Position numbers and translations under genes: made by a program
Assembly: GCA_002269645.1 (NCBI GenBank)
Contig: NIVC01000396.1
Span: 248,001 to 312,000, forward strand
DNA: 64,000 nucleotides
Source of the DNA: Macrostomum lignano
Taxonomy: Eukaryota
Direction of reading: 5' to 3'
Notes under the pieces: generated by a model
Told to the model about the DNA's origin: nothing
Databases searched by the model: none
Seen by the model: only the letters and a program-made list of their open reading frames with translations
Part shown: positions 417-56,225 of the stretch, one piece after another
Numbering within the stretch: position 1 is the stretch's first letter
How the letters are laid out: every line of letters begins with the position of its first letter

Positions 417-870
417 TATGGAGATTATCCTACGCTTGATAAGGAGATTGATATGGAGATTATCCTACACTTGATAAGGAGATTGATATGGAGATTATCC
501 TACACTTGATAAGGAGATTGATATGGAGATTATCCTACACTTGATAAGGAGATTGATATGGAGATTATCCTACGCTTGATAAGGAGATTGATATGGAGAT
601 TTAGCGGAATGGGCGACCCTCGCCTCCCCGCTGTGTCTACGGACCACCCTGCAGCTAAAAGATATGGAGATTATCCTACACTTGATAAGGAGATTGATAT
701 GGAGATTATCCTACGCTTGATAAGGAGATTGATATGGAGATTATCCTACGCTTGATAAGGAGATTGATATGGAGATTATCCTACGCTTGATAAGGAGATT
801 GATATGGAGATTATCCTACGCTTGATAAGGAGATTGATATGGAGATTATCCTACACTTGATAAGGAGACT
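417..870. repeat. 35-bp minisatellite (GGAGATTATCCTACACTTGATAAGGAGATTGATAT)n, decaying to about 1010
   Basis: Direct tandem copies, interrupted once at 602-660. Confidence 0.95.
602..660 (+). mobile_element. 59-bp micro-element, copy 1, with 12-bp TSD GATATGGAGATT (590-601, 661-672)
   Basis: 602-658 matches 46024-46080 at 55/57 nt. Flanked by a direct duplication of host repeat sequence. Ends in CTAAAA. Confidence 0.8.
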
Positions 871-32795: not shown

Positions 32796-33293
32796 GACTT
32801 GGGAGCTGGGGGACAAAAAACCCCAAAATCTCACGCCTCAATGATTCGGATTTTTCAAAAATAATTTCCGACTAAAATTCCCAGTGAGCCGCCTGAGCCC
32901 TCCCACCACGACAGACTTGAAGAAGTTCTTAGCAAAGTGAATGAATATGTCATGCACAGTCAACAGACCAAATCCAAGGAAGGTCACAATAGAAAAACAA
33001 TTCTGAGTCACGCATCACGTGCGGAACTGCCTGTAGTCGTAAAATTGATTTTTTGAAGCTGCCCGTGGAAATGATTGACAGCAGCGGTTGGTGCAGTTTA
33101 ATCAGTCACTTTAAACAAGTCAAAATTATTCTTAGATCTATCATGCATACTTTGGATTATCTTTGCTGAGGGGGGGGGCAAAGAAGCTCCGACTCTCGCG
33201 ACTCGAGCTCTGCAGCTTGCCCTGCTGAGATGGGGCGGCGGCAGCTCTGGGCAGCGTTACAATCTGGTGAATTTTTATGAACTCAACTTTCAG

Positions 33294-36200
33294 GACTTCG
33301 TCAACAGGCGCCGCAGCAGAGGCAACTGGCAGGGCGAAGCCCTCGCCCTGGGCGACCTGGTCTACCGGGTCTGCCGGGAGCACCGGGGCTGCGGCACCGA
33401 CCCGGCCGTGGCCAGAGTTGTCCGGTTTTTCTCCGACCAGCTCGGCTCCGAGGAGGCCTGCAGCCGCCTGCAGGTCGGCAGCTGCTACACCGCCGACGCC
33501 TTTGTCGCCCTGCTGGCCGTCGGCAACATGGGCCGCGCTGGCGGCGGCGCCTCCGCCCTTGTAGGCTGCGCGGCCAATCCGCGCCTGGCGCTGGCGCACC
33601 GCGTCTTCGCGCTGCAATCGCTGCGCCGATTTGACTACGACAAGGACAACGACGCCGGGGCGCGCGACCGGCTGGCGCGGCTGCTGCTGGACGGCGCGCT
33701 GGACGCGGAGCTGCGCATCGCCGCTTACCGGGCCCTGGCCGCGATCGGCCTGACCGGCCAACGCGCCGACAGCCTTCGCTCGGCCGTCCGGCGGCTGCTG
33801 ACCAGCCCGAATGAGGACAGGCAAACCCAGCTATTTGTCCGAACCCACCTGTCCGGACTGGCCGGCGGGGCCTCCGACCCGCTGCTGGACAAGGCCGCGG
33901 TGGCCGAAGCCGCAAAACTGCTTCAAGAAGCAGCAGAATCGGCGCCGGACATTGCGAAGGAGCTGGACTGGCTGAGCTGGCGCGAGTACTCCAGCGCCTG
34001 GCGCCTGCAGCACTTCAGCCACGACTGGGCAACCGGCGGGCGCATTGAAGCCTCGGTGGTGTTCTCGCCGCAGTCGGCAATCCCGCGGTACATCGGCCTC
34101 AACCTGACGCTCATCGACCCTGGCCGAGGCCGGCAGGTCAACGCGCTGGAGCTCGGCCTGCGCATCGAGGGCGTAGACGACGAGGCGCACGAGGCCTACA
34201 AGCTCTTCGCCCAGCGGTTCGGAGCCTCAAAATCCCCCGGCATGGACATCTTTCTCCGACGCAGGGTGCGCCGGCAGACGGTCGGGGTGGACCTGACCCC
34301 GGAGCAGGAGAGCCGGATGCAGGCGGCGCAGGAGCCCCGGGTGGACATTGTGGTGCGGCAGTCCGGGGCCGAGGTCTCCCACAGCACCGTCAGTGGCATC
34401 GGCCTGACAGCGCCGCTGCAGCTCCTGAAGAACATCGACTTCTCCACCATCAGGCAGTTGATGGAGGTGCTGCCGCAGTTTAAGAAGTTCTTCGACAGCA
34501 AAAGGTCATCAATGTCGGCTGGCGTCCTGTCGGAGGAGGCCGTGTCGCTGCCGACGATCTCTGGCGCGCCGCTGATTGTGAAGAGTTCGGCGCACTACCT
34601 CACCGAGCTGCGGCTGGACAAAGTGCTCGACCTGAGCTGGACCGGAAACTCCTCGGCCAGGCTGGAGCTGCGCCCCGTGGCCGCGCTGCGACAGTCGCGC
34701 ACCGTCTCTGTTGACGCCCCGTTCGAGCGAATGGGCGTGCGGACCAACTTGAGCTTCCTGACGAACACGGGACTGGGGCTGAGCCTGGAGAGGGCCCGGT
34801 CTGACGAGGCCGACAGCGACCAGACGATCTCGATGAAGCTGGAGCCCCTGGACAAGCGGCAGAGTCTGGCGGACGCAAAGACTGACGCTGCGTTCTTCTG
34901 GCACGCGATCGGCGCAGACGGTGAAGCGACGCCGGTTGAGCAGCCGCTGGTGCCGTCGGAAGGAATGGAGCAGTCGGTGAGGTGCACCGACAACTTTATA
35001 AAGAAGCACTCGGGCCTGAAGCTCTGCGTGCAGTCCAAGAAGGTCTCGTCGGCTTCCTCCAGTTCAGCCAGCGGAGACACGGCAAGCCTTCTGAGCAGCC
35101 TGCGCCGCAGTCCGGGCAGCTTCCAGCTCTACCTGGAGAAGGATGACAGCCTTGGCGGATTCGAGCTCTATTTCCGGCAGAAGAGGCCGACTCCGCTTGA
35201 CCCTGGCAACAACTGGCTGGAGCTGCTGATCGGGGATCGGAACTCGCCTGACCGCATGCTGAAGCTGGCGCTGCGCTCGTCCCGACCCACCGGCAGCTCC
35301 AGCTGGCGATTCGAACTGATCAACCCGGTGTTCCCGGTGTCCCTGTTCGCCCAGGTGACCAACTCGACTAGCGAGTCTCAGCTGCAAGCGGACGTTCGAA
35401 TCGGCTCGGTTGAGTACAAGGCGGAGGGCGCGGCGCAATGGGCATCGGCAGATTCGCCGCAGATGCGACTGGCCGGCAGTTTCTATCGCAAGGACAAAGT
35501 CAGGCAGCGGGTGGAGATTTCCCTGGCGCACCGGATGGATGGCCGCGTGCTGGTGCTGCTGCCGCGGGCCAGCACCGCCTTCAACCTGACCCTGCAGAGC
35601 GGCAACCAGCTTCGACTTCTGTACGACCTGCAGACAGCGGCCGCCAACTTCACCTGGAAGATCGCCTCCGAGTACGCATCGCCCGCCGGGGTTCTGCACT
35701 CAGTGCAGTACCAGCTGAAGTACGAGAACAAGTTCAATAACAGCCGCAGGGACTACGGCGCCGTCATTTACGACTTGAAGGTGAGGAATGCGGAGGGGCG
35801 GCGGGTCGGGCACAGCCTGCACGCCAAACTGCAGCGCAGCATCGGCGCCATCAGCCGGGCCAACGTCAGCGTGCTGCACCAGCTGCGCCTCGGATCGGCG
35901 CTGCGACGCTCGCCGTTGGACTTCAAGCTGCAGGTCGGCCTTAGCGAGACCATCAACGGAGCGACGTTCAGCGCCGAGGGCAACGGCCAGCTGACCTACT
36001 ACAGGAGGGACACCGGCCAGGAGGTGACCGCCAAGCTTGAGGGCCTGAGAGTGAGCATGGAAGAGAACTCGAATATCGATCCCGTTGGTACCCAGTCTCT
36101 GTACGAAATCAACTGCGGCCTGGGCTACGAAGGCTACAAGGCCAGCTACAAGGGGGTGCTGCGCTACCTGCCCAGGCGGGACTGGGGGAGGCTGCGCCAG

Positions 36201-39200
36201 GCTTTCGAGCTGCAGCTGGGCGCTCAGCTGCTTGACGGCAGCATTGGCTCGGAAGTGACGCACTACTGGCACTTGAAGAACTACGTTTTCATGCCCGACG
36301 GCGGCCGGCAGATTGCGAGCGCGCAGATTGCGCGGGTGGTTTACGCCAATGAGACCCTGCTTCACATCCGCCATCAGCTGAATCGCGAGAGCCCCCTCGC
36401 TGCCTTGAGACACGACCTGTTTGTGCAGAGCAAACTGATCTCCCAGCTCAAGCTGAACTCGAGCGTCTCTTTGGCCCAAGAGGGAATCATGAGCATTGAT
36501 ACTAGTTTGGAGTTCGGCTCCAGCCAGGTATTCCAATGCAAGCAAAAATTTGAGTACATCGGGCTCGAGGAGGACCACCAGGTGAAGCACCGGGCGCAGC
36601 TGCTGTTGAAGAACTTGTACGTGCTGGAGTCGGACGCGCGGGTCAGTAGGGAGACGGCGGCGAGCCTGCTGCGGTTCCTGCTGTACCAGAGGCGCATTGT
36701 GGCTGGCCGCTACAATTTCCGCTACAGCTTGGCCCTGTTCGCCCGCTTCCTGGCTTCCATGCGGTTCAACGAGACGTCGAGGCTCACAGGGCCGGAGCCG
36801 GACCGGCGGACCGTCCTGGAGAATGTCATCGACCTGGCGCAGACCAACGGCACCGTCTGGAAGAATCAGCTGATGGCGCACTTTGACGGCTCGGAGGTGT
36901 TCAACTACGGCTTGTTACTGGAAAGGCAATCCAGAGATGAAGTGCAGAGACTGCGCGCCTTCCAAGTGGAGGCGTTCGGCTCCGGACAGTCGTTCAGGAC
37001 GCGGCTTGAGGCTCGGATGAAGAGCAGCGCCTCGCAGGCCGAGACGAGGCTGAATCTGACGTCTGGAGACACCTGGGGCTGGCACCGCGTGGAGGCCGAC
37101 GCGGCGGTGCTCATTAAGGGTGAGCAGAGCCTCTCGTGGAGGGAGAACGCCGAGACTGAAGCCGCCTCTCAGTTGCATTTCGACACAAAGCTCACAGGCC
37201 ACGTGTTAAATCGAAGAATCGATTCAAATGGAATGATTGGAATATGGAAGCAAATCAGCTCAACAGGTCGAGTATTCCGAGTGACGAGTGCTGCTGGAAC
37301 ACCGAAAGCGAACGCCACTTTCAACTTGAAACTGCTGCGGTCGCCGGAGGTGCTGCAACTGACCAACTCGCTGACCAACAGTCTGACGTTTCTGCCGTTC
37401 CGCCAGCTGGGAAGCACCATTGATGTCAAAAGTACATCGGGAACTTCTTATGCGTCACTTTTGTCCGAGTTCCAAGTGGACAACGATAAGGTTGCCTCGG
37501 CCAAGGCGTTGCATTCGCCAGCGGTCAGTCTGATCGACGTGAAGACGAAGCACTCGAATTTCCAGGAAATCAAGCTCAAGATCGGCCGAGAGCAGCTGAC
37601 GGGGCTGGCGGGCGAGACGAATTTCACCGCCATAGCGAAATTCACGCCTTTGGCTGGAAGGTCGGTGCGAGGCAGTCCGGTATCGTCACTGCCAACACAA
37701 CCCGGCCAAATACAAGAGGCTGGTGTCGGTGAGGGGCGACCTGGAGCTCGTGGGTCTGGAGAACTACATTCAGAGGAAGCGATTCAATGGCGAGGCCCTG
37801 CTGCAGCTGAAGCACAGCAACGAGTTCGACCTGCTGTTCTCAGTGGCGACGCCGAGTCCAGCTGGCATTGAGCTGCCGCTGCTGCGTTTGTCCAGCAACT
37901 TCGAGTTCGTGCCGTTGCGAGCCGAGCTCAAACTGCGCACAGCCGGCAGCTCCGGCCAATTGCTCAGCTACGGAGCCCGACTCGAGTTCGAGCCCAGCCG
38001 GAAGGCCAACGCGGATGTCGAGTTTGGAGAGCGAAGAGCGGAGCTGGGTTGGTCCCTGCAGCCCAGCCTGGGCGGAGCCGGCCGCTCTGCGCAGTTCCTG
38101 GCGAGGAACAGCTTCCTGGTGGCGCAGCCGGTCTTTGTTCACGGCGTTCTCAACTCCACCTGGCCGCTGAGAGCCGAGCCGCTCGAGGCCAGCATGGAGG
38201 TCAGGCTGAGCTCAACCAGATTCCCCGGGATGTCGATGCGGCTGGTGAACTACCTGGAGCGGAAGCTGGCTTTGCTGAGCATCATTGCTCAACCAGACAA
38301 CTCAGTCACCGACGTCTTCAGGCTGAGCTACAATCAGAGCGCGGATTTCGAAGGCATCCGAGGCGACACCTTTGCCAAATTCGATCTCAGCTCATTCTCG
38401 GAAAACATTGCGACCCGCTCCGTCAGAGTCAACTATTTGTTCGGCGTTAAAAAGGAGCTGCACTTTGAGGCGAGTCAAGACTCGATGACGATCCACACAG
38501 GAAGAATCCTCTGTTACTCGGAGCCGCGCCAAGTCGCAAGTGTCCGAGGGGTGGCCGAAGCCGCCGATTTCGTCGTTGCAATTAAATCGCAGCGAAGCTG
38601 GGCCGTCTATCTGACCAGATCGCCCATCGAGGCCAGCCGATCCTCTGTGTGGCACCTGTCCTATGACCAGTTCAATGACGCGAATCAGCTGTCAACTCCG
38701 TTCTCCGCTAAGGTGGAAATTTCCGACCCGTGGAGCGTCAGAAACGGCGAGGTGAGCATCTACGAGAAGACGTTCGAGCTGAGGACGCACCCCGCTGGCG
38801 GCATCGAGCTGGTTGTGAAGACCGGAGCGCCCGTGCTCTACAGAGTTCTCTGGTCGTCGAGTGGCGACTCCGGCACCGCAGGTGACAAATCCATGCGACT
38901 GGAGATCCGAGTTGACGATTCGATCACCGTGGCAGAGATTGTGCGGCGGCCAGGCCAGGCGGTGGTCACCTACGGCAGGCAGGACGCGCCCAACACTCTG
39001 ACCGTTGCGTACACAGTCAGTGGCAACCGAATGAACCTCACAGTCAGTCACCGGGTCGACAGTCGAAGCTCCAGCGCTCAGATCCTGCCAGGAGTCACCG
39101 TGCCGCTGCCGGCCACTCCGTTCAGGCTGGCCGCGCAAAACCGAGGCGGTCTGAAAGGCGATTTCCAGCTGAGCCTGGCGTCCTCAGCGGCGGGCAGCCT

Positions 39201-40736
39201 GACCTACGGCACAGTCTCAGTCGCCTACCGCGGGCTCTGAGCGCCAGGGCGAACCTGACGGGGCCGCGGGGCGACACTCTGTGGCAGCTGAGCGCCGACC
39301 TGGACCGCGGCGAGAGGATCGCGGAGATTCGGACCAGTCTGAACGGCGTGTTTCATTTCGTACTGGCGGAGCAGCTGCTCCAGTTCCGATCCAGCGACGT
39401 GGCCGACCTGTCGCTGGCCTTTCCGAGCTTCCGAACGTCCAGAACGAATCAAGGAGGCGTCGGAGCAAAAGCGGTGTTCTTGAACCTGACGGTGCCGCTT
39501 CTCGGACTGCGCCGATCTGTGGAGCTGGCGGCTGAGCACCAGCTGGTTGAGAACGGGCGGAAGGTGGTGCTGAGCTGCGGCCGGGCGGGAGCTGAGATGC
39601 TCAACGGCTATTTGACAGTCACAGAGCAGACGGACCATGGTGTCAACTTCAGTGTGGAAGCTCAGCTCTCTTCCAACGCTGGATTGCTGTGGTCAGCAAC
39701 AACTGTGAAGACTCAGATGTCAGCTGGAATGCTAAGGGGCGAAGACAACTACACCATGGCGTTCAGCAGCCGGGTGTTTGTGGATGGAATTGAGAACAGC
39801 GCCGTGACGGCTGGCCTGCTGGGCGGGTCGGGCGGCTGGCCCAGCCGGCCCAGCCGGGGCAGCGCTCGGGCCGCGGGCTTCACCGACTGGGAGGTCGGCT
39901 TCGACCTGTCCCGGCCGGACGGCTCTAAGTCCCTCGGCGGCAGGCTGGTCAGGTGGGCGGGCGCTCAGGTCGGACCCTACTCGGCCAATGCGAGTCTCGG
40001 CTCAACAGGCCAGCCCGGCGGTCGCGACTTCCGCTTCGAAACTGAGAGCCCACAGCGTCACTTCGTGGTTGCCAAGGAGTTCGATCCGAACCTGGACAGG
40101 AAGAGTCTGAAATTCTTCATCAACAGGCGACTCAACCACGGCCTGGTGGTGGCTCTTCAACGAGGACCGGAGCCGCAGCAGAGAGCGCTTGAGTTCGAAT
40201 TGCCGACCCGACTGATTCGAGTCGAAATTCGGCCGCTTCAGAGCCGGTCGGAGTCGTCCAGCGGTCTCGGCGTCCGCGTGGCCTGGGACGCCGCTCGAGC
40301 GCCCGACAGAGAGATCCGCCTCGACCTGATGGCAGGCAGCGAGGGCTCCGTCTGGGCCGCGTCGGCGACATGCGAGGCGCCGTTTCTGCTCGACCTGATG
40401 ACGCTGGAGCTGCGACGGGAGGACGGTGTCGGCCGCTCCGCACTGGTGCTCCGACAGCTGGCCGGCGACCGGGAGACGGCACGAGCCCAGGTCGGCTTCG
40501 AGCAGCAGTTGCGTCGAATCGACCTGCTGCTGGGGACCAGCGGCCCGACGGTGGGCGACGGCGCCAGCTCGCGGCTGAGCGCGACAGTCGAGATTGACGG
40601 CGACTCTCTGGACGACGAATCTCGCCGTCGCCGTCTTCACCTGTTCCTTGGCGACGTGCGGATCGAAGTGCCGTCGCATGGCGTCAACAAGTCGTTTAAG
40701 TTTGTCTACCGGCCGATGCGAGAGTTCACCTGCGCG
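33294..40736 (+). CDS. LLTP exon 6, about 7.4 kb, with two apparent frameshifts (about 37645 and about 39233)
   Basis: Acceptor TTTCAG|GAC. LALGDLVYRVC, ELRIAAYRAL, PQSAIPRYIGLNL and NALELGLRIEG are LLTP motifs. Three consecutive ORFs (frames 0, 1, 0) have continuous coding character. Donor GCG|GTGAGT. Confidence 0.85.
34257..34274 (+). other. furin-type cleavage site RRRVRR (about residue 790)
   Basis: R-X-R-R motif just after the LLT domain, where insect apolipophorin II/I is cleaved. Confidence 0.6.
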
Positions 40737-40914
40737 GTGAGTTTTGAATTGGATTGCTGGATCAGGCCAGGCTTCCAAGGCCGATTGCCGATATGTATCG
40801 AAAAATAGTTTTCAATAAAAACTTTGGCTAGGAATCGGTCTTAAACTGCTTCAGCTTATGATTGGTTCTCCTTTTTGGGAGCTGTCTGGTGAAGCATGCA
40901 AAGATTGGGGAGAA

Positions 40915-41225
40915 GAGACTGGAATGACAGAGAAGAGATTAGAATGACAGAGAAGAGATTAGAATGACAGAGAAGAGATTAGAATGACAGAGAAGAGATT
41001 AGAATGAGAGACAAGAGATTAGAAAGAGAAAGAAGAGATTAGAATGAGAGAGAAGAGATTAGAATGAGAGAGAAGAGATTAGAATGTCAGAGAAGAAATT
41101 AGAATGACGGAGAAGAGATTAGAATGACAGAGAAGAGATTAGAATGACAGAGAAGAGATTAGAATGACGGAGAAGAGATTAGAATGACAGAGAAGAGATT
41201 AGAATGACAGAGAAGAGATTAGAAT

Positions 41226-41313
<88 letters not shown>

Positions 41314-41510
41314 AAATGAGAAGAGAATATATTAGAACGAGAGAGAGAGAGATTAGAATGAGAGAAGAGATTAGAATGAGAGAAGAGATTAGAATGAAAG
41401 AAAAGAGATTAGAAAGAGAAAGAAGAGACTAGAATGAGAAGAGAAGAGATTACAATGACAGAGAAGAGACTCTAATGACAGAAGAGATTAGAATGAGGAG
41501 AGAAGAGATT

Positions 41511-41560
<50 letters not shown>

Positions 41561-42540
41561 AAATGAGAAGAGAAGAGATTAGAACGAGAGAGAGAGGTTA
41601 GAATGAGAGAAGAGATTATAATGAGAATAGAAGAGATTAGAATGAGAGAAAAGAGATTAGAATCAGAGAGAAGAGATTAGAATGAGAGAGAAGAGATTAG
41701 AATGAGAAGAGAAGAGATTAGAATGAGAGAGAAGAGATTAGAATGAGAGAGAAGAGATTAGAATGAGAGAAGAGATTAGAATGAGAGAGAAGAGATTAGA
41801 ATGAGAGAGAAGAGATTAGAATGAGAGAGAAGAGATTAGAATGAGAGAGAAGAGATTAGAATGAGAGAAGAGATTAGAATGAGAGAGAAGAGATTAGAAT
41901 GAGAGAAGAGATTAGAATGAGAGAGAAGAGATTAGAATGAGAGAGAAGAGATTAGAATGAGAGAGAAGAGATAAGAATGAGAGAAGAGATTAGAATGAGA
42001 GAGAAGAGATTAGAATGAGAGAAGAGATTAGAATGAGAGAGAAGAGATTAGAATGAGAGAAGAGATTAGAATGAGAGAGAGGAGATTAGAATGAGAGAAG
42101 AGATTAGAATGAGAGAGAAGAGATTAGAATGAGAGAGAAGAGATTAGAATGAGAGAGAAGAGATTAGAATGAGAGAAGAGATTAGAATGAGAGAAGAGAT
42201 TAGAATGAGAGAAGAGATTAGAATGAGAGAGAAGAGATTAGAATGAGAGAAGAGATTAGAATGAGAGAAGAGATTAGAATGAGAGAGAAGAGATTAGAAT
42301 GAGAGAAGAGATTAGAATGAGAGAGAAGAGATTAGAATGAGAGAGAAGAGATTAGAATGAGAGAGAAGAGATTAGAATGAGAGAGAAGAGATTAGAATGA
42401 GAGAGAAGAGATTATAATGAGAGAGAAGAGATTAGAATGAGAGAAGAGATTAGAATGAGAGAAGAGATTAGAATGAGAGAGAAGAGATTAGAATGAGAGA
42501 GAAGAGATTAGAATGAGAGAGAAGAGATTAGAATGAGCGA
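40915..42540. repeat. 18-20-bp minisatellite (GAGAGAAGAGATTAGAAT)n with embedded (GA)n
   Basis: Direct tandem units. Confidence 0.95.
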
Positions 42541-42789
42541 TAGAAAGAAGATGTTGTGAAGGAGAGAGAACGTAAATGAAAAATATCGATAACCAGTTTC
42601 ATTTCTCATTTAGCTAGATTCCACTCCAATGAACATCATAGGTCAGTCTTACACAGCAGGCAGGTTCCTTAATTAAAGATTTTGATTCCTGGAAAATGGC
42701 AAATTTTGATTTGAAGAAAACTAACTTTTGGGCGTGTCCGTAGACAGGAGAAATCGAGTAAGTCTAAAAATAGACTCTCCTGCGCCCAG

Positions 42790-43248: not shown

Positions 43249-43394
43249 GTGAGTTCGAATCCGCCTCTCTGTGTGTGTGATTGGTCTGGTCTCAGTTTAG
43301 CTTGTTTGATAGCTAATTGAACGCATCTCATCTCTGGCATGCAGTGCTAGACCATCTCAACCGGTCCTGAACCATCTTGAATGCTCCTATCTCA

Positions 43395-43775
43395 CCTGAA
43401 CCCATCTCTCCCTGCATCTCACCTTGAATACTCCCGTTTCACCCTGAATACTCCATCTCACCCTAAATGCTCCCATCTCACCCTGAATGCTCCCATGTCA
43501 CCCTAAATGATCCCATCTCACTCTGAATGCTGCCATCTCACCCTGAATGCTCCCATCTCACCCTGAATGCTGCAATCTCACCCTAAATGCTCCCATCTCA
43601 CCCTAAATGCTCCCATCTCACCCTAAATGCTCCCATCTCACCCTGAATGCTCCCATGTCACCCTGAATGCTCCCATGTCACCCTGAATACTCCCATCTCA
43701 TCCTGAATACTCTCATCTCACTTTGAATGCTCCCATCTCACTTTGAATGCTCCCATCTCACGCTAAATGCTCCCA
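43395..43775. repeat. 20-bp minisatellite (TCCCATCTCACCCTGAATGC)n
   Basis: Direct tandem units. Confidence 0.9.
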
Positions 43776-44221
43776 AGATACTCACATCTAATCTAGAACT
43801 AGAATACACCAATATGATCTAGAATACTCCAATCTCATCTCTCAAAACACTCCTATCTCATCAAAATTAGCAATAAAAAAGTGACAGTTCAACTGCTCTA
43901 ACAACTAAACGCAGTTACAGTGAGCACACAAAGTTCGAGAATAATAAATGATAATTGACACTTTTACGCCCACTAAAAGGACCAGCTGGTGCAGCCAGCC
44001 TACAATCAGCTTACATACAAAATCCCACAAATTAGTGAGCAGGCTGTGAAGTCAGCCGCAGTTTCACACCTGCGCAAAATTTAATTCCCCCGTGCAAGCA
44101 AAATGCGCCTTCGCCTCCGCCCCCGTGACGTTCCGCGGAATCCTTCCCACGCACTGCAATGACTTGATGGAGAGAGCAGTACGAAACTTAAATGAATGAA
44201 GTAACTTCTCGTAATTACAAT

Positions 44222-44720
44222 GAGTCTGTTTTTACCTGTACTGCATTTGAATACAGACTGATATGAGTCTGTATTTACCTGTACTATATTTGAATACAGA
44301 CTGATATGAGCCTGTTTTTACCTGTACTGTATTTGAATACAGACTGATATGAGCCTGCGTTTACCTGTACTGAATTTGAATACAGACTGATATGAGCCTG
44401 TTTTTACCTGTACTGAATTTGAATACAGACTGATATGAGTCTGTATTTACCTGTACTGTATTTGAACACAGACTGATATGAGCCTGTATTTACCTGTACT
44501 GAATTTGAATACAGACTGATATGAGTCTGTATTTACCTGTACTGAATTTGAATACAGGCTGATATGAGCCTGTTTTTACCTGTACTGAATTTGAATACAG
44601 ACTGATATGAGTCTGTATTTACCTGTACTGAATTTGAATACAGACTGATATGAGTCTGTATTTACCTGTACTGAATTTGAATACAGACTGATATGAGTCT
44701 GTATTTACCTGTACTGTATT
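44222..44720. repeat. 43-bp minisatellite with an internal 10-bp inverted repeat (AGTCTGTATT...AATACAGACT)
   Basis: About 11 tandem units with no unique spacers. Confidence 0.92.
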
Positions 44721-44792
44721 TGGAAGTCTGTTTGTCCATTTGGAGACTGTATCGGGCCTGTTTTTGAAGCCTGTTAGTTCCTGTTTTTGCAG

Positions 44793-47133
44793 CTGCCGCA
44801 CTCACTCGCCTCTCATCTGCACTTCCGCCAGAAGTCGGCCGTCGCCCACCTCAAGGAGTCGCTGCTGGACACCTGGATGTCGTCCGGCCTGCGTGCATTC
44901 GGCTCGGCGACCGACGCCCTGCTGCGGGCGGCCGGCGAGCGCCTGTTGAAGTCGGTGGACGCCAAGCGGCTGGCCGAGGAGGCGACCAACCCGCTGCTGG
45001 CCGACCTGACTGCGCTGAAGCTCTACGCCGAGGCCGTCGTCGAGGCGGTCGGCAGCGATCCGAGGCTCGGCGCCATCGTCCGACTGTTGAAGCGATTCAG
45101 CGGCGCCGCCTCCTGGCGAGTCGCTGAGCTGTCTGACTGGCTCGCCAGCCGCCTGTCCGAGGGCGGCGTCGGCCTCGTCGATCTGCGCCTGGCCGAGAGG
45201 GTCCAGCTGGCCGCCGACGCCGCGGTCGAGTTCGTCGACAGCCTGCCGCTGCTCGCCGCCTGGCGTGCCGGCCTGGACGCCGGCAAATCCGCGGCCGGCC
45301 TCGTCAGCGACTGGCTGTCCAGCTGCCGGGAGGTCTCGGACAGTTTCCTTCGCCGGATGCTGAGCTCCGGCGCCGCTGTGTCCGGCCGAGACGGCGCGAC
45401 CGCCTCGGTGCTGCGCCTGCTGTCCGAGCGGGCGAGCCAGCTGCTGTCGTTGGGCTCCGTCAAGGCGGAGATGGCGAAGGCGCTGCTGCAGATCGAGCTG
45501 GCCCTGAAGGCAGCGGTCAGCGACTCACTCGGGCTGCTGGCCGATGACCTGCTGCCATTTGCCATTGGCCACCTGGGCGACTTGGTCCGCCTAAAGGAGT
45601 GGCTGGACGAAGCGCTGTACCAGCTTCGGTTGTGGATCGACTTCGGCGCCGGGTCGGGCGCGGCCCAGCGGCAGGAGCGGCTCCTCAGCTGGCCGCTGTG
45701 GCTGGCGCGGCAGCTGGCTGGGCCGGGGTCGCTGGGCTACTGGCGCAACCTCGAAGACAGCTGGCGGCTGCTCACCAACGGCGAGTTCGCCGCCGCAGTC
45801 CGCCGCCTGCTGATGACTGACGCCTACGGGCTGCGCGTCTGGCGGCCTGTCTGCGACGCCAAATGCCGAGAAAGCGGAGACGCCGCCTTCGCCGCGGTGG
45901 TTGGCGACGTGTACCCGCCGGTGTACCTGGACAGCCTGAGCCCGCGGGTTTGGCGCCGCCGCCTGGCCCGAGTTCGATCGATTCGAGCAACGGCGCGTCG
46001 ATTCCGAGACCGACTGTTCGCTGTAGCGGAAAGGGCGACCCTCGCCTCCCCGCTGTGTCTACGGAACACCCTGCAGCTAAGACTGTTCGCCGCCTCGTCC
46101 GACTGCTACGTGCTGCTGTCGATGTTCAACGACTGGCGCCAGATGGACGCCGGCCTGTGGGACCCGTTGGCGCGCCAGCTGGCGATGCGGCACCGGACGG
46201 CGGTGCTGGCAGGCGGCCGCAGCCTCATCACCTTCGACGGGATCAGCCTGGTGAACCCGTTGCCATGCAGCTACGTTCTGGCGCACGACTTCCGGCTGAA
46301 TGAGTTCACCGTGGCCCAGAGCTACCGCGAAGTGAACGGGACGGCGGTGCGGCACGACCTGCTGGTGAGGTTCGGCAGCGTGCAGTACTCAATCAGCCCC
46401 AGCGGCGTTCTCAAAATCAACGGCCGCATCGAGAAGCTGCCGATGAGTCGCTACGTCGGCGGCCGGCTGGTGCAGGCGGAGCGCAAGAAGAGCCGCCTGC
46501 TCGTCCGCTTCCACGGCGAGACGCTGCGCAACACCCTGCTGCTGCGGTGCAACTCCATCACCGACTCCTGCGTGCTGCGGGTGCACCCTCTCTACCAGGC
46601 CCGCGTCGACGGCATGGCCGGCAGCAACGACGGCCACAGGGCCAACGACCTTCAAGGCGGTAGCCGGGACTCGCACATCCGCTACTGGACCTCCGGCAGG
46701 TGCCTCGCCACCGAGACCGGCGGACCCGACGCCACCCTCTCGCCGGCGGTGGAGTCGCCGGAAGCCGAGGCGAACTGCCAGCTGTGGTTCTCTCGGCGCA
46801 GCTTCTCGTTCGACAAGTGCTTCAGCACAGTCAACCCTCGGCCCTACCTGGACCTGTGCCGCGCCTTCGCCCGTCTCGGCAAGGACATCTGCGAGGTGGC
46901 CGTGCAGTACACCGACCGCTGCCGGAACGAGCTGGTGAACATCAACACGCCCTACAGCTGCGTCCGGTGCAGGGTCGACGAGGAGACGACCATCGTCAAG
47001 GACGACCTGATCAGCGAGCCGCGGGTGCTGCGCAAGCGCCTGCAGGCCGTCTTCCTGCTGGAGAACTCGGACTGCGTGGCCAGCGCCATCGGCCTGAGGG
47101 GCTCCTACATCAGCTACCTGGCCAAGCTCATCG
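44793..47133 (+). CDS. LLTP exon 8 (includes VWD and C8-like domains)
   Basis: Acceptor TTTTGCAG|CTG. TAVLAGGRSLITFDG...PCSYVLAHDF is VWD. CQLWF...KCFSTVNPRPYLDLC is C8-like. Donor G|GTGAGC, phase 1. Confidence 0.88.
46022..46080 (+). mobile_element. 59-bp micro-element, copy 2, inserted in frame in exon 8, with 10-bp TSD GACTGTTCGC (46012-46021, 46081-46090)
   Basis: The protein reads RLFA-VAERATLASPLCLRNTLQL-RLFA. 55/57 identity to 602-658. Confidence 0.82.
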
Positions 47134-47184
47134 GTGAGCCGGGGGTTCGCGGCCGGGGATTCCAGCGGCTTCCGAACTCCCGGA

Positions 47185-47731
47185 CACTCTCTCTCTCACC
47201 TCTCATACCCTCTCACACACCCTCTCACACAACCTCTCACACACCCTCTCACACACCCTCTCACACACCCTCTCACACACTCTCTCACACACCCTCTCAC
47301 ACACCCTCTCACACACCCTCTCACACACCCTCTCACACACCCTCTCACACACCCTCTGACACACCCTCTCACACAACCTCTCACACAACCTCTCACACAC
47401 CCTCTCACACACCCTCTCACACACCCTCTCACACACCCTCTCACACAACCTCTCACACACCCTCTCACACACCCTCTCACACACCCTCTCACACAACCTC
47501 TCACACAACCTCTCACACACCCTCTCACACACCCTCTCACACACCCTCTCACACACCCTCTCACACACCCTCTCACACAACCTTTCACACAACCTCTCAC
47601 ACACCCTCTCACACACCCTCTCACACACCCTCTCACATACCCTCTCACATCTTCTCTCATACCCTGTTTCACACTTTTTTCAAATCCTCTTTCACTCCCT
47701 CTCTCACACCCTTTTTCACACCCTCTCTCAT
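47185..47731. repeat. 12-bp minisatellite (CCCTCTCACACA)n, left part; continues at 51843-52310 after the LTR element
   Basis: Direct tandem units. Confidence 0.93.
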
Positions 47732-47946
47732 TGTTATGTCTTTTTCTCCGACGTGGAGCTGCTACATTTAAGTAAGAAGACAATGGTTCGCTTAAGCGGT
47801 TCGAGCTATCGTTTTGCTCCGGTTGATACAAACTCCTCTTGGGATTCATCTCGTAACTACTTTATTATAAAATAATAGGTTGTGCCCTAGACAACAAAAC
47901 ATTGGGCTGGGGGCATACTCTGTGTCTTCTCTGCTAATATACAACA
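47732..47946 (-). repeat. 3' LTR (215 bp, TG...CA), preceded by PPT AAAAGGGGGAA (47947-47957)
   Basis: Matches 50282-50496 in inverted orientation, with 3 mismatches seen. Confidence 0.92.
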
Positions 47947-48435
47947 TTCCCCCTTTTGTCAATAAAAAGTTGCATTGTCAGTTATCCGGAATTATTCACT
48001 GTATTGCAACCAATCCGGTTTTCTCAATTTGCTTCGATCCCTCAGTATCCTTGTGCCCACGCCTTCTGCTCCAGGGTCAGCGTCATCCTGGTCTGTGTCC
48101 GCTGTCTGAGATTCTCCTCGGCTTGGCACGTCTTGGACCGGTTGAGTTGATTCACTCTCTCGCCGCTCTTTCTCGGTGGTAGTTTTGTCGCTCTGAACTC
48201 TCCTAGGATCCTTCAGAATAGGCGGTAGGTGGTGAGCCTCCGGCTTGTTCTGTCCAGGTAATTCTGCACTGACAATTTGGTCGATGTGTCGCTTCCAGAC
48301 TTGTCCGTTGACCAACAGTCTATAGGACAGCGGTCCTGTGCGGGCGATCACCTTGGCAGAGATCCACCTGTTCTCTCGCTCCCTTCTGAAGTCCAACGTC
48401 AGAACTGAGTCTCCGTCCTGAAATTCTCGAATAGT

Positions 48436-50013
48436 TTATCCTCTCTCTATTTGTCGTTCAGTGACATCCGTCTGCTTGTTTAACACTCTTGAGTAAGCAT
48501 CCGGCTTGAGAAAATCCAACCGTGTCCTGCGACTGTAGCATAACATCATCTCTGCTGATGTTCTACCGGTTGTTGAATGAGGTGTGCTGCGGTAGCGGAA
48601 CAGAAAGTTCTGCATGCTCAAGATTGGATCACTGTGAGTCTTAACTCCTGCTTTGATGGCAGACTTTGCTGTTTGCACCATTCTTTCACTAAGTCTGTTG
48701 GTACGCGGATGTCCAACAGCTGTCAAAATCTGTCGGATGTTATTCCGCTCTAGGAAAGTACGGAACTCAGCTGAGCAGAATTGGCTACCATTGTCACTCA
48801 ACACTTGCTGTGGGATGCCAAATCGTGCGAACGTTTCTTGTAGACATTCTATCGTCCTGTTGGTAGTTGCGTGCTTCATGGGAAAGATCTCAACCCATTT
48901 ACTAGTTGCATCGACTATAACAAGCCAGTAGTATCCATGGAATGGTCCCATGTAGTCCAGTTGAATTCGAGTCCAAGGCTTTTCTGGCCAGACAAGAGGT
49001 TGAACTGGTGCTTGTGCAGGCAAATTCCTTTGCAGCTGACAGCCTTCACAACTACGGACTAGGGCTTCTATAGCCTTGTCGATTCCTGGGAACCATACAT
49101 GCAGTCTAGCTATGGATTTCATTGCAACAATTCCTGGATGTACATCATGAAGCAGTTCTAACACAAGCTGTTGTACGCTTCTTGGAATAATGACTCTTAC
49201 TCCCCAAAACAGCACACCTTGCTCAATGCACAACTCGTTCCGCTTCCTGAAGAACTGTTCCAGCTCTTGCTCACAGGTCTCTGGCCAATCATTTTGACAG
49301 TATCGAACAACTCTCTGAAGCTGTGAATCTTTCTGTGTCTCGGTTCGTATTGTTTCTGCGTTGACTGGTAGCATTTCTAGCCTGACCTCCAAGACACGAT
49401 CAACCTTGCTGATATTACCAGGCACTGGGAGACGTGAAAGTGCGTCAGCATTCGAATGATCCTCTGTTCTTCTGAATTTGATGGTATACTGATGGGCAGA
49501 AAGCAACACGGCCCAGCGCTGAAGTCTGCTTGCTGCTATGCTCGGAATGTCCTTCTTATCTCCAAAAATGGTCAGTAGGGGTTTATGGTCAGTCACTAGT
49601 ATAAAATGATGTCCAAAAAGATATTGGTGAAATCTTTTAACTCCGAAGACGATGGCCAGCGCTTCTTTCTCTAGTTGAGAGTAGTTAATCTCAGGTTTTG
49701 TTAGAGTTCTCGAAGCAAACGCTACAGGCCTTTCCTCGCCATTCGGCATCAAATGTGAGATGACACACCCGATTCCATATTTGGAGGCGTCCGTTTGCAA
49801 CACAAGCTGCTTCTTAGGATCAAAATGAGCCAGAACACGCTCAGAAGTTAGAGTTGCCTTCACTTTCTCGAATGCTGCCGAACACGCCTCACTCCAATGA
49901 AACTCTGCGTCTTTGTGCAACAGTCTGTTGAGAGGTACCAGTATTGATGATAGGTTTGGAATAAACTTTCCATAATGGCTGCTCATCCCTATCAAAGAAC
50001 GAACCTCTGACAC
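48436..50013 (-). pseudogene. gypsy pol: RT C-terminus, RNase H, integrase
   Basis: 525-aa ORF. The integrase tail continues in frame after a nonsense codon, to about 47992. Confidence 0.9.
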
Positions 50014-50281
50014 GTTAGTTGGTGTTGGAGCTTCATGAATTGCCCGAACTTTCTCTTTCGAGGGATGGGTGCGTGCGTGCGAGGAGGGTGCGTGAGAGAG
50101 TGTGAAAGAGAGGGTGAGAGAGAGTGTGAGAGAGAGTGAGAGAGGGGAGAGAGAGGGTGTGACAGAGGGTGTGAGAGAGAATGTGTGTGAGGGTATAAGA
50201 GAAGGTGTGAGAGAGAGGGTGTGAGAGATATGAGAGTGGTTGTAATAGGGGTGTGAGAGAGGGTGCGTGAGAGGGTATGAG

Positions 50282-50516
50282 TGTTGTATATTAGCAGAGA
50301 AGACACAGAGTATGCCCCCAGCCCAATGTTTTGTTGTCTAGGGCACAACCTATTATTTTATAATAAAGTAGTTACAAGATGAATCCCAAGAGGAGTTTGT
50401 ATCAACCGGAGCAAAACGATAGCTCGAACCGCTTAAGCGAACCATTGTCTTCTTACTTAAATGTAGCAGCTCCACGTCGGAGAAGGAGACATAACAATGG
50501 CGACGAGGATGGGATT
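50282..50516 (+). repeat. complete 5' LTR plus PBS, inverted and lodged inside the RT
   Basis: LTR at 50282-50496. PBS TGGCGACGAGGATGGGATT (50498-50516) is complementary to the 3' end of eukaryotic tRNA-Ser(GCU) (…AATCCCATCCTCGTCG-CCA). Confidence 0.88.
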
Positions 50517-50519
50517 GCC

Positions 50520-51794
50520 GATTCATCGATAACATAGCCCAAGAATTCAATTCTGTTTAGGCGGAATTCACACTTTTTCCTATTCAAATGCACACCGTGA
50601 GCTAAAAGACGTTCTAATACAGCTTCCAACCTTTTGTCGTGGTCTTCCAAACAACTGCCGGATACAAGAATGTCGTCTATATAGACAACTACTTCCAAGC
50701 TTGGTAAAATTTTCTCCATCGCTTCTTGAAATTGCGCAGGGGCTGATGCCAGACCCATTGTTAGTCGCTCGCATTGGAACAAACCCAGATGTGTGTTAAT
50801 TGTAGCGAAATTTTTGCACGAATCCTCCAGTTCCAGTTGTAAAAGCGCTTGCGAAATATCCAATTTCGAGAAGACTCTTCCACCATTCAGAGTTGCGAAA
50901 ATTTCTTCCGGTTTCGGCAGAGGGTACTTGTCAACCTCCAATTGAGGATTAACGGTTCTCTTGAAATCAGCGCAAATCCTTACGGATTTTCCATCGCGCT
51001 TCAAAACTGGGACAATCGGAGATGCAAAGTCTGATGCGCTCACTTTTTTTATTATGCCTTGAGCTTGCAAATTCGCCAGCTCCTCTTCAATGAGGCTTTT
51101 GATCGCAAATGGCACCGGTCGACTCTTGCAAAACTTTGGAATGAAGTTTTCTTTCAACAGTATTCTGGCCTTTAGCCCTTTGATAGTGCCAAGGCTTTCA
51201 GCAAACACCTTGATCATACTTCTTCATTAACCGCTCGATAGGTGGAACCAACGTTGTTGTTTTCACATGGGCAAACTTGCTCCAGTCAATTTTCAATGAA
51301 GAGAGCCAGTCCCGACCTAGAAGATTCACTCTGTCTCCCTTCACAACAAGCGCAGTTAGTTGATACTGTCTTTCCTGATAGTTAGTTACGGTAACAGTAG
51401 CTTCGCCCAGAACTGGTATGAGATGATCTGTGTAACTTGACAGTCTAACATTAGATTTAGACCACCTTAAGCCAATTTTCTTGCCAGTATTTTCGTTAAT
51501 AAGGGTCTTGTCTGCGCCAGTATCCAGTTGGAAATTTACAAAATGCCCATTTATATTTAACTCGCACATATACGGTGCTGATCCACTAAAGCCAGCCATT
51601 CCTGTAGCAAACACAGTCCTGATCTCGGAATGCTTGTCTCGACCACTGCAATCCGAACCCTCACTTTCTGACTCACTGTCGAAATTCCGTGCGTAAAGCA
51701 CCTTACCGGACTTCCCACGTTTTGAAGAGTTGAATCGCTTCGACCTGCCACTTCCAGACTCTTTTGCCTTGTTCTTTGTACGGCATGCATGTAC
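50520..51794 (-). pseudogene. gypsy gag C-terminus (knuckle remnant VHAC), protease and RT N-terminal part
   Basis: ORFs 51198-51701 and 50453-51217 contain DTG protease, ASPIVPVLKRDG and YIDD motifs. Confidence 0.88.
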
Positions 51795-52327: not shown

Positions 52328-55382
<3,055 letters not shown>

Positions 55383-55422
55383 TTAAATTTTCCTTCTCAT
55401 ACCCTCTCTCACACCCACTCTC

Positions 55423-55558
<136 letters not shown>

Positions 55559-56019: not shown

Positions 56020-56225
56020 AGGACACCCACCCACCTCTCACCTGCTATCCTATCCACCCACCTCATTTTCTACTCTCACCTGTTACCCACCCCACCTCAT
56101 TTCCTACTCTCACCTGTTACCCACCCACCTCATTTCCTACTCTCACCTGTTACCCACCCAGCTCATTTTCTACTCTCACCTGTTACCCACCCACCTCATT
56201 TTCTACTCTCACCTGTTACCTGTTC
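56020..56225. repeat. about 33-bp tandem repeat (CTCACCTGTTACCCACCCACCTCATTTTCTACT)
   Basis: About 5 copies. Confidence 0.8.

What the first reader, a model, noticed from the sequence alone, without database searches (positions are those of the whole stretch)
46012..46090. Same micro-element inserted in frame in a coding exon, with GT...AG ends: possible introner or exonised insertion
Seen: copy 2 plus its 10-bp TSD adds exactly 69 nt (23 codons) with no stop, just upstream of the VWD domain, duplicating the peptide RLFA on both sides. It contains a phase-0 GT at 46023 (GCT|GTAGCG) and a CCCTGCAG acceptor ending at 46076. Splicing out these 54 nt would leave only a 5-aa scar (RLFA-L-RLFA). 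Established: introner elements create new introns by inserting with TSDs and supplying splice sites. Inference: the insertion is tolerated in a roughly 4100-aa gene either by translation through it or by being spliced out, so this family could be an intron-generating or protein-inserting micro-element. Copy 1 lacks the 5' GT, so spliceability may be incidental.
Basis: partly seen in the sequence, partly recalled or inferred. Interest (0 to 1): 0.8.

Follow-up and report, generated by a model that had tools for sequence, protein, structure and literature searches.

The report
Tiny transposon inserted in-frame in exon
A 59-base mobile element really did jump into a coding exon of a flatworm (Macrostomum lignano) yolk/lipid-carrier gene and adds 23 amino acids, but it appears to be read through as protein, not spliced out as a new intron.

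Summary
Window 46022-46080 is a 59-nt element flanked by an exact 10-bp duplication (GACTGTTCGC). A second copy, 56/59 identical, lies at 600-660 inside a 35-bp satellite and has its own 10-bp duplication.

The window is Macrostomum lignano assembly Mlig_3_7, contig NIVC01000396.1. A paralogous copy of the gene in the same assembly (L004) has the empty site: one GACTGTTCGC and exactly 69 nt fewer. Another paralogue (L005) is filled. A distant orthologue also lacks the segment. This is therefore a genuine insertion, not ancestral sequence.

The introner reading is not supported:
- The RNA-evidence-based GenBank models of both filled paralogues run one uninterrupted exon (44832-47133) through the element.
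- The proposed donor GTAGCG is unlike the gene's real donors (GTGAGT or GTGAGC). Real introns here are 623-9130 nt.
- The GT is mutated to GA in L005, which keeps the frame open across the element, and copy 1 has no GT.
- 51% of random 69-nt stretches of this gene's coding DNA contain an in-frame GT..AG pair.

Most likely it is an exonised micro-transposon, translated as 23 aa in a variable linker about 40 aa upstream of the VWD domain. Its class (MITE-like or LINE-dependent) is unresolved, because only two independent copies could be reached.

The parts
46012..46021 (+). Left copy of the 10-bp target-site duplication GACTGTTCGC
   Evidence: The empty paralogue L004 has this 10-mer only once.
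46022..46080 (+). Micro-element copy 2, 59 nt (TGTAGCGG...CTGCAGCTAA), inside the coding exon. It is translated as VAERATLASPLCLRNTLQL plus the duplicated RLFA.
   Evidence: The 69 nt are absent from L004 and present in L005 with 2 substitutions.
46081..46090 (+). Right copy of the 10-bp target-site duplication
46023..46076 (+). Proposed 54-nt GT..AG pseudo-intron. It is judged incidental, not a real intron.
46025..46054 (+). Imperfect hairpin inside the element (GCGG..GGCGA CCC TCGCC..CCGC). It is weak, with z = -1.95.
590..599 (+). Left duplication of copy 1 (GATATGGAGA). It could be 10-12 bp because the next satellite bases, TT, equal the element's first bases.
600..660 (+). Micro-element copy 1, 61 nt, ending CTAAAA instead of CTAA, inserted in a 35-bp satellite
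661..670 (+). Right duplication of copy 1
44832..47133 (+). Host exon of the LLTP gene (GenBank PAA83915.1, BOX15_Mlig020540g2). It is uninterrupted through the element.
46209..46652 (+). VWD domain (exon residues 460-607). The insertion ends about 40 residues upstream of it.
33102..40736 (+). Upstream LLTP coding region (Vitellogenin_N and open beta-sheet domains), with frame switches near 37.7 kb and 39.1 kb

Best explanation
A 59-nt non-autonomous mobile element of an unannotated Macrostomum lignano family inserted once into the large VWD-containing exon of a vitellogenin/apolipophorin-like LLTP gene and made a 10-bp target-site duplication. The family has short terminal inverted ends (TTAGC...GCTAA), a small internal hairpin and a 3' A-run of variable length.

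The event dates to about the time the paralogous subgenome copies of this neopolyploid genome diverged. At least two copies carry the element (window and L005) and one does not (L004).

The gene stays open because 59+10 = 69 nt is 23 codons and the frame that was hit is one of the element's four open frames. The element is retained in the mature mRNA and translated as a 23-aa insertion in a poorly conserved, length-variable linker about 40 residues before the VWD domain. The GT...AG pair inside it is incidental.

Shown: the insertion, the duplication, the empty site, the open frame, and retention in the annotated transcript models.
Inferred: translation into protein, neutrality or tolerance of the insertion, and the transposition mechanism.

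My rough split on mechanism is about 45% cut-and-paste MITE with a 9-10-bp duplication (Mutator-like), about 35% LINE-mediated retroposition of a small RNA, and the rest other.
For: - Two copies are 56/59 identical, against 0 matches expected by chance.
- Each copy has an exact 10-bp flanking duplication. The satellite phase shows a clean 71-nt interruption at copy 1.
- Paralogue L004 (NIVC01000428.1) has the precise empty site. Its flanks are 97-100% identical and overlap by exactly the 10-mer. Its protein PAA83197.1 reads RLFATSSD.
- Paralogue L005 (NIVC01002957.1) is filled at the same site.
- The UniProt ML2 models agree: A0A1I8F1T8 is filled and the forward part of A0A1I8JET4 is empty.
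- A 40%-identical orthologue from a JGI metatranscriptome is 36 residues shorter than the window protein (13 shorter than the empty paralogue) between the anchors VWRPVC and LITFDG, and it aligns with gaps over most of the inserted segment.
- It is the only indel above 14 nt found across the roughly 13 kb of the gene and its introns that aligns with L004, outside the satellite stretch and intron TEs.
- The GenBank models are built from RNA-seq and transcript evidence. They have one exon, 44832-47133, across the element, and the same holds in L005.
- The exon is open for 767 codons. pN/pS is about 0.5, and window-specific changes are 8 synonymous to 7 non-synonymous.
- The site lies outside the VWD domain, in a stretch where the orthologue itself has indels.
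Against: - No direct RNA-seq junction counts or peptide data could be examined.
- The annotation pipeline discards minor isoforms (TACO isoform-frac 0.75), so low-level splicing is not excluded.
- 93% of read pairs multi-map between paralogues, so the transcript support for the filled copy could partly come from paralogues.
- The window's LLTP copy has an extra frame switch near 39.1 kb that L004 lacks, and L005 has a 1-nt deletion. Some filled copies may therefore be decaying, or the assembly may contain indel errors.
- Only two independent insertions were reachable, so the element class, copy number and target preference are unresolved.
- No autonomous partner and no LINE 3'-end similarity was found in the window.
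Confidence: 0.8

Rival explanations
1. Introner: the element supplies GT(46023)...AG(46076) and is spliced out as a new 54-nt intron, leaving a 5-aa scar. The family would then generate introns.
For: - A phase-0 GT and a CCCTGCAG acceptor exist, with a CTAC branch-like motif about 16 nt upstream.
- Introners are known to insert with duplications (3-9 bp; PMC9860276).
- Minor isoforms are filtered from the annotation.
Against: - RNA-based gene models keep the element in the exon in both filled paralogues.
- The donor GTAGCG differs from the gene's four GT donors, which are all GTGAG[T/C]. Real introns are 623-9130 nt, and the genome average is 1.1-1.4 kb.
- L005 and the ML2 models have GAA instead of GTA, so the GT is lost, yet the frame stays open across the element.
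- Copy 1 has TT, not GT.
- 51% of random 69-nt stretches of this gene's coding DNA carry such a pair.
- Neither of the two known copies is an annotated intron.
Confidence: 0.06
2. The 69 nt are ancestral to the gene, and L004 lost them by precise deletion between the two 10-bp repeats. Copy 1 would then be derived from the exon.
For: Recombination or slippage between 10-bp direct repeats can delete precisely. The three paralogues are nearly equidistant (29, 34 and 33 differences), so the tree does not polarise the event strongly on its own.
Against: - Copy 1 carries none of the exon's flanks and has its own, different 10-bp duplication in a satellite.
- The distant orthologue lacks the segment.
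- The filled copies also share a derived gypsy insertion in the next intron that L004 lacks. This makes L004 the outgroup state for two independent characters.
Confidence: 0.03
3. Mechanism rival: the element is a retroposed small RNA or SINE-like unit, mobilised by one of the APE-type LINEs through target-primed reverse transcription, rather than a DNA-transposon MITE.
For: - The 3' end varies only in the A-run (CTAA versus CTAAAA).
- Both duplications start with GA, next to the A-run, which could be microhomology. Both targets share GAGAYY|GAY.
- TAGCGGAATGG resembles a Pol III box A; that consensus is from my own memory.
- Apparently recent LINEs with APE, RT and RNase H are in the window. 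One of them is absent from paralogue L004.
Against: - Both duplications are compatible with a fixed 10 bp, whereas reverse-transcription insertions usually vary.
- The ends form a 5-6-bp inverted repeat (TTAGC/GCTAA).
- There is no box B, no tRNA or Rfam match, and no similarity to the 3' ends of the window's LINEs, whose tails are (CAA)n.
- The two copies start at the same 5' base, so there is no 5' truncation.
Confidence: 0.35
4. Assembly or annotation artefact: the 69 nt are a misassembly or polishing error.
For: Mlig_3_7 and ML2 are error-prone, highly redundant assemblies.
Against: - The segment is present in two different contigs of Mlig_3_7 with 2 substitutions between them.
- It is also present in gene models of the independent ML2 assembly, in three sequence variants: VAER, EAEW and EAER.
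- A second copy sits elsewhere with a different duplication.
Confidence: 0.01

Closest known systems
Introner elements (Micromonas, Aureococcus, dinoflagellates, fungi and others; PMC9860276)
   Same: A short non-autonomous element that inserts into genes with a target-site duplication and contains a GT and an AG.
   Different: - It is not spliced in the RNA-based gene models.
- The donor is weak and not conserved among copies or paralogues.
- The duplication is 10 bp, against the 3-9 bp reported for introners.
- Only 1 of 2 copies is in a gene, and neither is an intron.
- No introner report for Macrostomum was found in the library.
Rickettsia palindromic elements (RPEs), bacterial MITE-like repeats inserted in frame in ORFs (PMC10969869)
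   Same: A small repeat inserted inside a protein-coding sequence in frame. It adds a peptide segment at a structurally tolerant place, and the host protein stays open.
   Different: - RPEs are bacterial and about 150 bp.
- In-frame insertion is a recurrent property of their families.
- Here only one in-frame case is known, and copy 1 plus its duplication (71 nt) would not preserve a frame.
Eukaryotic MITEs, especially Mutator-like ones with 9-10-bp duplications (from my own knowledge)
   Same: Non-coding, tiny, flanked by a duplication of apparently fixed length (10 bp), with short inverted ends and a hairpin-forming interior.
   Different: - At 59 nt it is far below typical MITE size (100-800 bp).
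- The inverted ends are only 5-6 bp, whereas Mutator-like MITEs usually have long ones.
- No autonomous partner was identified.
TE exonisation in animals, for example Alu or SINE segments in coding exons (from my own knowledge)
   Same: TE-derived sequence becomes part of a mature coding mRNA.
   Different: Classical exonisation recruits an intronic TE through new splice sites, usually as an alternative exon. Here the TE landed directly inside a constitutive exon and is simply read through.

Membership tests
Introner element | The element is removed from the mRNA by the spliceosome, i.e. it is an intron in transcripts. | tested here: not met
   Indirect test. The RNA-evidence-based GenBank CDSs PAA83915.1 and PAA54172.1 contain the 23 aa, and the exon 44832-47133 is continuous. 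Minor isoforms are not excluded.
Introner element | Splice signals are conserved at or near the element ends in family members. | tested here: not met
   GT is present only in the window copy. L005 has GA and copy 1 has TT. GTAGCG differs from the gene's donors, GTGAG[T/C]. The pair is at chance level (51%).
Introner element | Many near-identical copies make up introns of unrelated genes. | not testable with these tools
   Only about 140 kb of M. lignano DNA was reachable. It holds two independent copies, one in a satellite and one in an exon.
Introner element | Target-site duplication on insertion. | tested here: met
   An exact 10-bp duplication, with an empty site in L004. This is longer than the 3-9 bp quoted for introners.
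MITE (non-autonomous class II element) | Duplication of fixed length characteristic of a superfamily. | tested here: inconclusive
   Exactly 10 bp at copy 2. Copy 1 is 10 bp and could be 10-12 bp. With n = 2, no conclusion is possible.
MITE (non-autonomous class II element) | Terminal inverted repeats. | tested here: inconclusive
   Only TTAGC/GCTAA, 5-6 bp, and imperfect in copy 2 (TGTAGC).
MITE (non-autonomous class II element) | Small, non-coding and AT- or structure-rich; an autonomous partner shares the ends. | tested here: inconclusive
   59-61 nt with no coding capacity of its own. The hairpin has z = -1.95. No sequence in the window or the fetched loci shares the ends.
SINE / LINE-dependent retroposon | Internal Pol III promoter or small-RNA-derived head. 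| tested here: not met
   No tRNA and no Rfam match at E<=10. There is only a box-A-like TAGCGGAATGG and no box B.
SINE / LINE-dependent retroposon | A-rich or simple-repeat 3' tail and variable duplications. | tested here: inconclusive
   The tail is AA versus AAAA. Both duplications are compatible with 10 bp.
SINE / LINE-dependent retroposon | 3' end shared with a partner LINE. | tested here: not met
   There is no match of 12 nt or more to the two LINEs in the window. One of them ends in a (CAA)n tail.
Large lipid transfer protein (host gene) | Vitellogenin_N / open beta-sheet lipid-binding module plus a C-terminal VWD domain. | tested here: met
   PF01347 and PF09172 match ORF 33102-37868. 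PF00094 VWD matches exon residues 460-607. VWF and mucin D-assembly structures match residues 461-699.
Exonised (translated) TE insertion | TE sequence lies in frame within the CDS and is kept in the mature mRNA. | tested here: met
   The mRNA evidence comes through the annotation, not raw reads.
Exonised (translated) TE insertion | The inserted peptide is present in the protein. | not testable with these tools
   No proteomic data were available. The tryptic peptide ATLASPLCLR would be diagnostic.

The most novel reading that the evidence does not exclude
The 59-nt unit belongs to an unusually small class of eukaryotic mobile element. It would be invisible to standard TE annotation, since repeats under 200 bp were filtered from the published M. 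lignano library. It would make 10-bp duplications and be short and open enough (4 of 6 frames) to be repeatedly tolerated inside coding exons. It would then act as a source of peptide insertions in a neopolyploid genome, a eukaryotic counterpart of Rickettsia RPEs, or occasionally as a seed for very short introns. The 12 word-sharing candidate proteins in the peptide search, which could not be listed, leave room for more in-frame copies.
Probability: 0.12. Interest if true: 0.65.

Novelty: new member of a known kind. Interest (0 to 1): 0.3.

Why it matters
This is a clean, datable example of a transposon landing inside a constitutive coding exon and surviving as extra protein sequence. The filled and empty sites are preserved side by side in the subgenomes of one neopolyploid animal.

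It also shows that a family of about 60-nt mobile elements exists in M. lignano that current repeat libraries would miss.

It does not provide evidence for transposon-driven intron gain in flatworms. If a genome-wide census showed many such in-frame copies, the family would become interesting as a generator of protein length variation.

Tried and rejected
- Peptide search for element-derived peptides in four frames against 5.8 billion proteins: 12 word-sharing candidates, none at E<=10, so nothing was listed. A local test showed that a 20-aa match scores only E of about 0.3-2 at that database size.
- Exact 24- and 26-mer scans of JGI metagenome contigs, GTDB genomes and IMG/VR: no hits. No outside copies and no sign of a bacterial or viral origin.
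- Rfam at E<=10 and ARAGORN: nothing.
- Search with the window's LINE RT, to reach more M. lignano contigs: it returned only distant hits, one of them a UniRef-only M. lignano entry with no contig, so no new M. lignano DNA.
- Look-ups of P0001, P0004 and P0005: not on record.
- Locus L006, an inverted fourth gene copy on NIVC01000428.1: it stops about 1.3 kb short of the insertion site.
- AlphaFold2 on 400 aa around the site with a 3-sequence alignment: mean pLDDT 39.8, so it was not used.
- Enumerating GT..AG candidates at the upstream frame switches was uninformative. No convincing short intron was found, and these are probably 1-nt indels.
- A 12-bp duplication for copy 2 (GACTGTTCGCTG/CG) was considered and rejected. 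The empty site is followed by CA, so TG belongs to the element.
- An excess of substitutions inside the element (2 in 59 nt between the window and L005) was considered and rejected. It is compatible with the 1.3% flank divergence (P of about 0.18 by my Poisson estimate).
Full report
**1. Observation**

Window 46012-46090 reads GACTGTTCGC, then a 59-nt element (TGTAGCGGAAAGGGCGACCCTCGCCTCCCCGCTGTGTCTACGGAACACCCTGCAGCTAA), then GACTGTTCGC again. The 69 added nucleotides are 23 codons in the reading frame of a long + strand ORF. They translate without a stop as ...RFRDRLFA-VAERATLASPLCLRNTLQL-RLFA-ASSD....

A search with up to 3 mismatches finds exactly one other copy, at 600-658, against 0 matches in 100 shuffles. 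A sensitive blastn-short finds no further copies in the window.

Copy 1 lies in a 35-bp satellite (416-868). The satellite motif recurs at 450, 485, 520, 555, 590, then 661, 696 and so on. The array is therefore interrupted by exactly 71 nt: a 61-nt element (ending CTAAAA rather than CTAA) plus a duplicated GATATGGAGA.

**2. Where the window comes from and what the host gene is**

- The exon's translation is 95% identical to a UniProt Macrostomum lignano protein.
- It is 100% identical to GenBank PAA83915.1 (BOX15_Mlig020540g2) on contig NIVC01000396.1 of assembly Mlig_3_7, GCA_002269645.1.
- The gene is a large lipid transfer protein. Vitellogenin_N and the vitellinogen open beta-sheet domain match the upstream ORF 33102-37868. 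A VWD domain matches exon residues 460-607, i.e. 46209-46652.
- Fitting PAA83915.1 back to the DNA gives five introns:
  - 40737-42789
  - 43249-44831
  - 47134-56263
  - 56541-57163
  - 57427-58680
- The four GT donors are GTGAGT, GTGAGT, GTGAGC and GTGAGT. The fifth intron is GC-AG. Intron lengths are 623-9130 nt.
- The element sits in exon 44832-47133, about 40 residues upstream of the VWD domain.

**3. It is a real, derived insertion**

M. lignano is a neopolyploid. Its assembly holds three (sometimes four) paralogous copies of most regions, with about 1.1% SNPs in coding sequence (PMC10733133). The 90% cluster of PAA83915.1 contains two further GenBank paralogues, and I fetched their loci.

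| Locus | Contig / protein | State of the site |
|---|---|---|
| Window | NIVC01000396.1 / PAA83915.1 | Filled, TGTAGCGGAAAGGG... |
| L005 | NIVC01002957.1 / PAA54172.1 | Filled at the same position with the same duplication; two substitutions (TGAAGCGGAATGGG...) |
| L004 | NIVC01000428.1 / PAA83197.1 | Empty |

In L004 the left and right 160-nt flanks match at 100% and 97% and overlap by exactly the 10-mer. The alignment shows a clean 69-nt gap with a single GACTGTTCGC. That 10-mer is followed by CA in L004, so the duplication is exactly 10 bp and the element's first bases, TG, belong to the element.

The protein sequences agree:
- PAA83197.1 and the forward part of UniProt A0A1I8JET4 read RFRDRLFATSSD.
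- PAA54172.1 and A0A1I8F1T8 read RLFAEAEWATLASPLCLRNTLQLRLFA.

Other points:
- A 40%-identical orthologue from a JGI metatranscriptome (P0006, L002) spans the site. Between the anchors VWRPVC and LITFDG it has 93 residues, against 106 in the empty paralogue and 129 in the filled ones. It aligns with gaps over most of the inserted segment.
- Across the roughly 13 kb of the gene and its introns that aligns between the window and L004, outside the satellite stretch and the intron TEs, this is the only indel longer than 14 nt.
- The reverse scenario, an ancestral segment deleted in L004 with copy 1 copied from the exon, is unlikely. Copy 1 carries none of the exon flanks and has a different duplication. 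In addition, the filled copies (window, L005 and the inverted fourth copy L006) share a derived gypsy insertion in the next intron that L004 lacks.

**4. Age and selection**

Over the 2,232 aligned exon positions:

| Pair | Differences |
|---|---|
| Window vs L005 | 29 |
| Window vs L004 | 34 |
| L005 vs L004 | 33 |

This is nearly a star tree and matches the published 1.1% divergence in coding sequence. The insertion therefore dates to about the time the subgenome copies separated.

Two differences in the 59-nt element between the window and L005 are compatible with the 1.3% flank divergence (my Poisson estimate, P of about 0.18). pN/pS is about 0.5 in all pairs. The window lineage has 8 synonymous and 7 non-synonymous private changes, so it is no more relaxed than the empty copy, which has 5 and 13. 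The exon has no stop in 767 codons.

Caveats: the window copy has an extra frame switch near 39.1 kb that L004 lacks, and L005 has a 1-nt deletion at the equivalent of 46666. These are either assembly indel errors or early decay in a redundant genome.

**5. Spliced or translated?**

The GenBank annotation of Mlig_3_7 is not ab initio. It was built from STAR-mapped RNA-seq assembled with StringTie, merged with a BLAT-mapped de novo transcriptome, and then passed through TransDecoder (PMC5730564). In that annotation both filled paralogues have a continuous exon through the element.

Four further points count against splicing:
- The proposed donor GTAGCG differs from the gene's real donors at +3 to +6 (+3 is still a purine). 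The 54-nt length is more than tenfold shorter than any intron of the gene, and the genome average is 1.1-1.4 kb.
- The GT is not conserved. L005 and the ML2 models have GAA (Glu) at that codon, and a third variant (EAER) appears in the reverse-strand part of A0A1I8JET4. All keep the frame open across the element.
- Copy 1 has no GT.
- As a null, 51% of all 69-nt stretches of this gene's coding DNA contain a GT..AG pair of 30-66 nt whose length is a multiple of three. The element is open in 4 of 6 frames, and 59% of shuffled elements are open in the frame used.

No canonical intron could remove the 69 nt precisely, so the empty-site proteins are not splicing products.

One ML2 model (A0A1I8F9L9) does use a 22-nt 'intron' inside the element (46055-46076). 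It does so in a frameshifted context, and I read it as a predictor artefact.

I conclude that the major mRNA retains the element. Low-level splicing cannot be excluded, because the pipeline dropped minor isoforms and I could not see raw reads.

**6. What the element is**

Features seen directly:
- Length 59-61 nt.
- The ends T(G/T)TAGC...GCTAA(AA) form a 5-6-bp inverted repeat.
- An imperfect internal hairpin (GCGG..GGCGA-CCC-TCGCC..CCGC; -10.7 kcal/mol, z = -1.95).
- A CTGCAG palindrome near the 3' end.
- A 3' A-run of 2 or 4.
- 10-bp duplications.
- Both target sites share GAGAYY|GAY at the left junction. With n = 2 this is only a hint.

There is no Rfam match and no tRNA. There is no similarity to the two LINEs or the gypsy element in the window. 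There are no matches in metagenome, prokaryotic-genome or viral collections.

The published M. lignano repeat library discarded repeats shorter than 200 bp, so such a family would be unannotated. About 140 kb of M. lignano DNA was reachable (the window plus L003-L007), and it contains only these two independent insertions.

A duplication compatible with a fixed 10 bp, together with inverted ends, favours a cut-and-paste MITE (Mutator-like elements make 9-10-bp duplications; my own knowledge). The variable A-run, the GA microhomology and the presence of apparently recent APE-type LINEs keep LINE-mediated retroposition alive. I put these at roughly 45% and 35%.

**7. Why it is tolerated (inference)**

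- The insertion is a multiple of three and open.
- It lies outside the recognisable domains, in a stretch where even the orthologue differs by indels.
- The genome carries redundant copies, including an intact empty one.
- A structure prediction was too poor to add anything (mean pLDDT 39.8).

**8. Comparison with known systems**

The element works like a classical TE insertion that has been exonised by read-through. It is not a member of the introners: the defining feature, removal by splicing, was tested indirectly and not met, and the splice signals are not conserved. No paper in the library links introners to Macrostomum.

The nearest functional analogy is the in-frame Rickettsia palindromic elements (PMC10969869). 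There, however, frame preservation is a recurrent family property. Here copy 1 plus its duplication is 71 nt.

**9. Verdict**

This is a new, unannotated member of a known kind of thing (a very small non-autonomous TE, exonised in frame). Interest is modest at 0.3. It would rise if a genome-wide census showed many in-frame copies or real spliced copies.

Noticed in passing
window 21964-24000: About 2 kb of simple repeat with 8- and 12-nt periodicity, GC 0.275 and extreme strand asymmetry (GC skew 0.8).
   Followed up: no
window 416-868 and 1605-2373: Two different tandem satellites. The 35-bp unit hosts copy 1 of the element. The 34-bp unit has 22.7 copies at 97% identity.
   Followed up: partly
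window 27381-31800: Non-LTR retrotransposon on the + strand, with a PHD finger, APE endonuclease, RT and RNase H, ending in a long (CAA)n/(TAA)n tail at 31580-31800. It is absent from the paralogous locus L004, so it is a fairly recent insertion.
   Followed up: partly
window 47134-56263: This 9.1-kb intron of the LLTP gene is filled by a Ty3/gypsy element (protease, RT, RNase H and integrase; 48439-51824, minus strand) and a LINE RT/RNase H fragment (52417-54786, minus strand). It also has 100%-identical 241-nt inverted arms (50084-50324 and 51795-52035). The same intron is 1.1 kb in L004. L006 has the gypsy element but lacks the 52.3-55.3 kb piece.
   Followed up: partly
window 37636-37868 and 38916-39237: Two reading-frame switches in the upstream LLTP coding region. 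The first is shared with paralogue L004; the second is specific to the window. No convincing short intron was found, so these are probably 1-nt indels, either assembly errors or real lesions. This probably explains why the GenBank model starts only at 39345.
   Followed up: partly
L005 about 4040 (window equivalent 46666): A 1-nt deletion in the filled paralogue L005 shifts the frame inside the VWD exon, so PAA54172.1 ends early at 702 aa.
   Followed up: no
L004 and L006 (contig NIVC01000428.1, 58-92 kb and 104-124 kb): The same contig carries two copies of the 144-aa gene and of the LLTP 3' exons in inverted orientation about 31 kb apart. One LLTP copy is empty; the other is of the gypsy-bearing type. 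This explains the chimeric forward-plus-reverse UniProt model A0A1I8JET4.
   Followed up: partly
window 57427-58680: The last annotated intron of the gene uses a GC-AG boundary (aag|GCAAGG), unlike the other four, which use GTGAG.
   Followed up: no
window 47200-47770: Just after the exon's donor, the intron starts with a long (CACACCCTCTCA)-like repeat that reads as PSHT(P/T)SHT in the exon's frame. The stop-to-stop ORF therefore runs 600 nt past the true exon end.
   Followed up: no
window 583-592 and 46005-46014: The two insertion targets share GAGAYY|GAY across the left junction (GAGATT|GAT and GAGACC|GAC). This may be a target preference or priming microhomology, but with n = 2 it may be chance.
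   Followed up: no
UniRef A0A1I8JEM7 (P0013): A 242-aa M. lignano fragment in the same 90% cluster as the LLTP is named 'Type VI secretion system membrane subunit TssM' in UniRef. This is evidently a mis-annotation.
   Followed up: no
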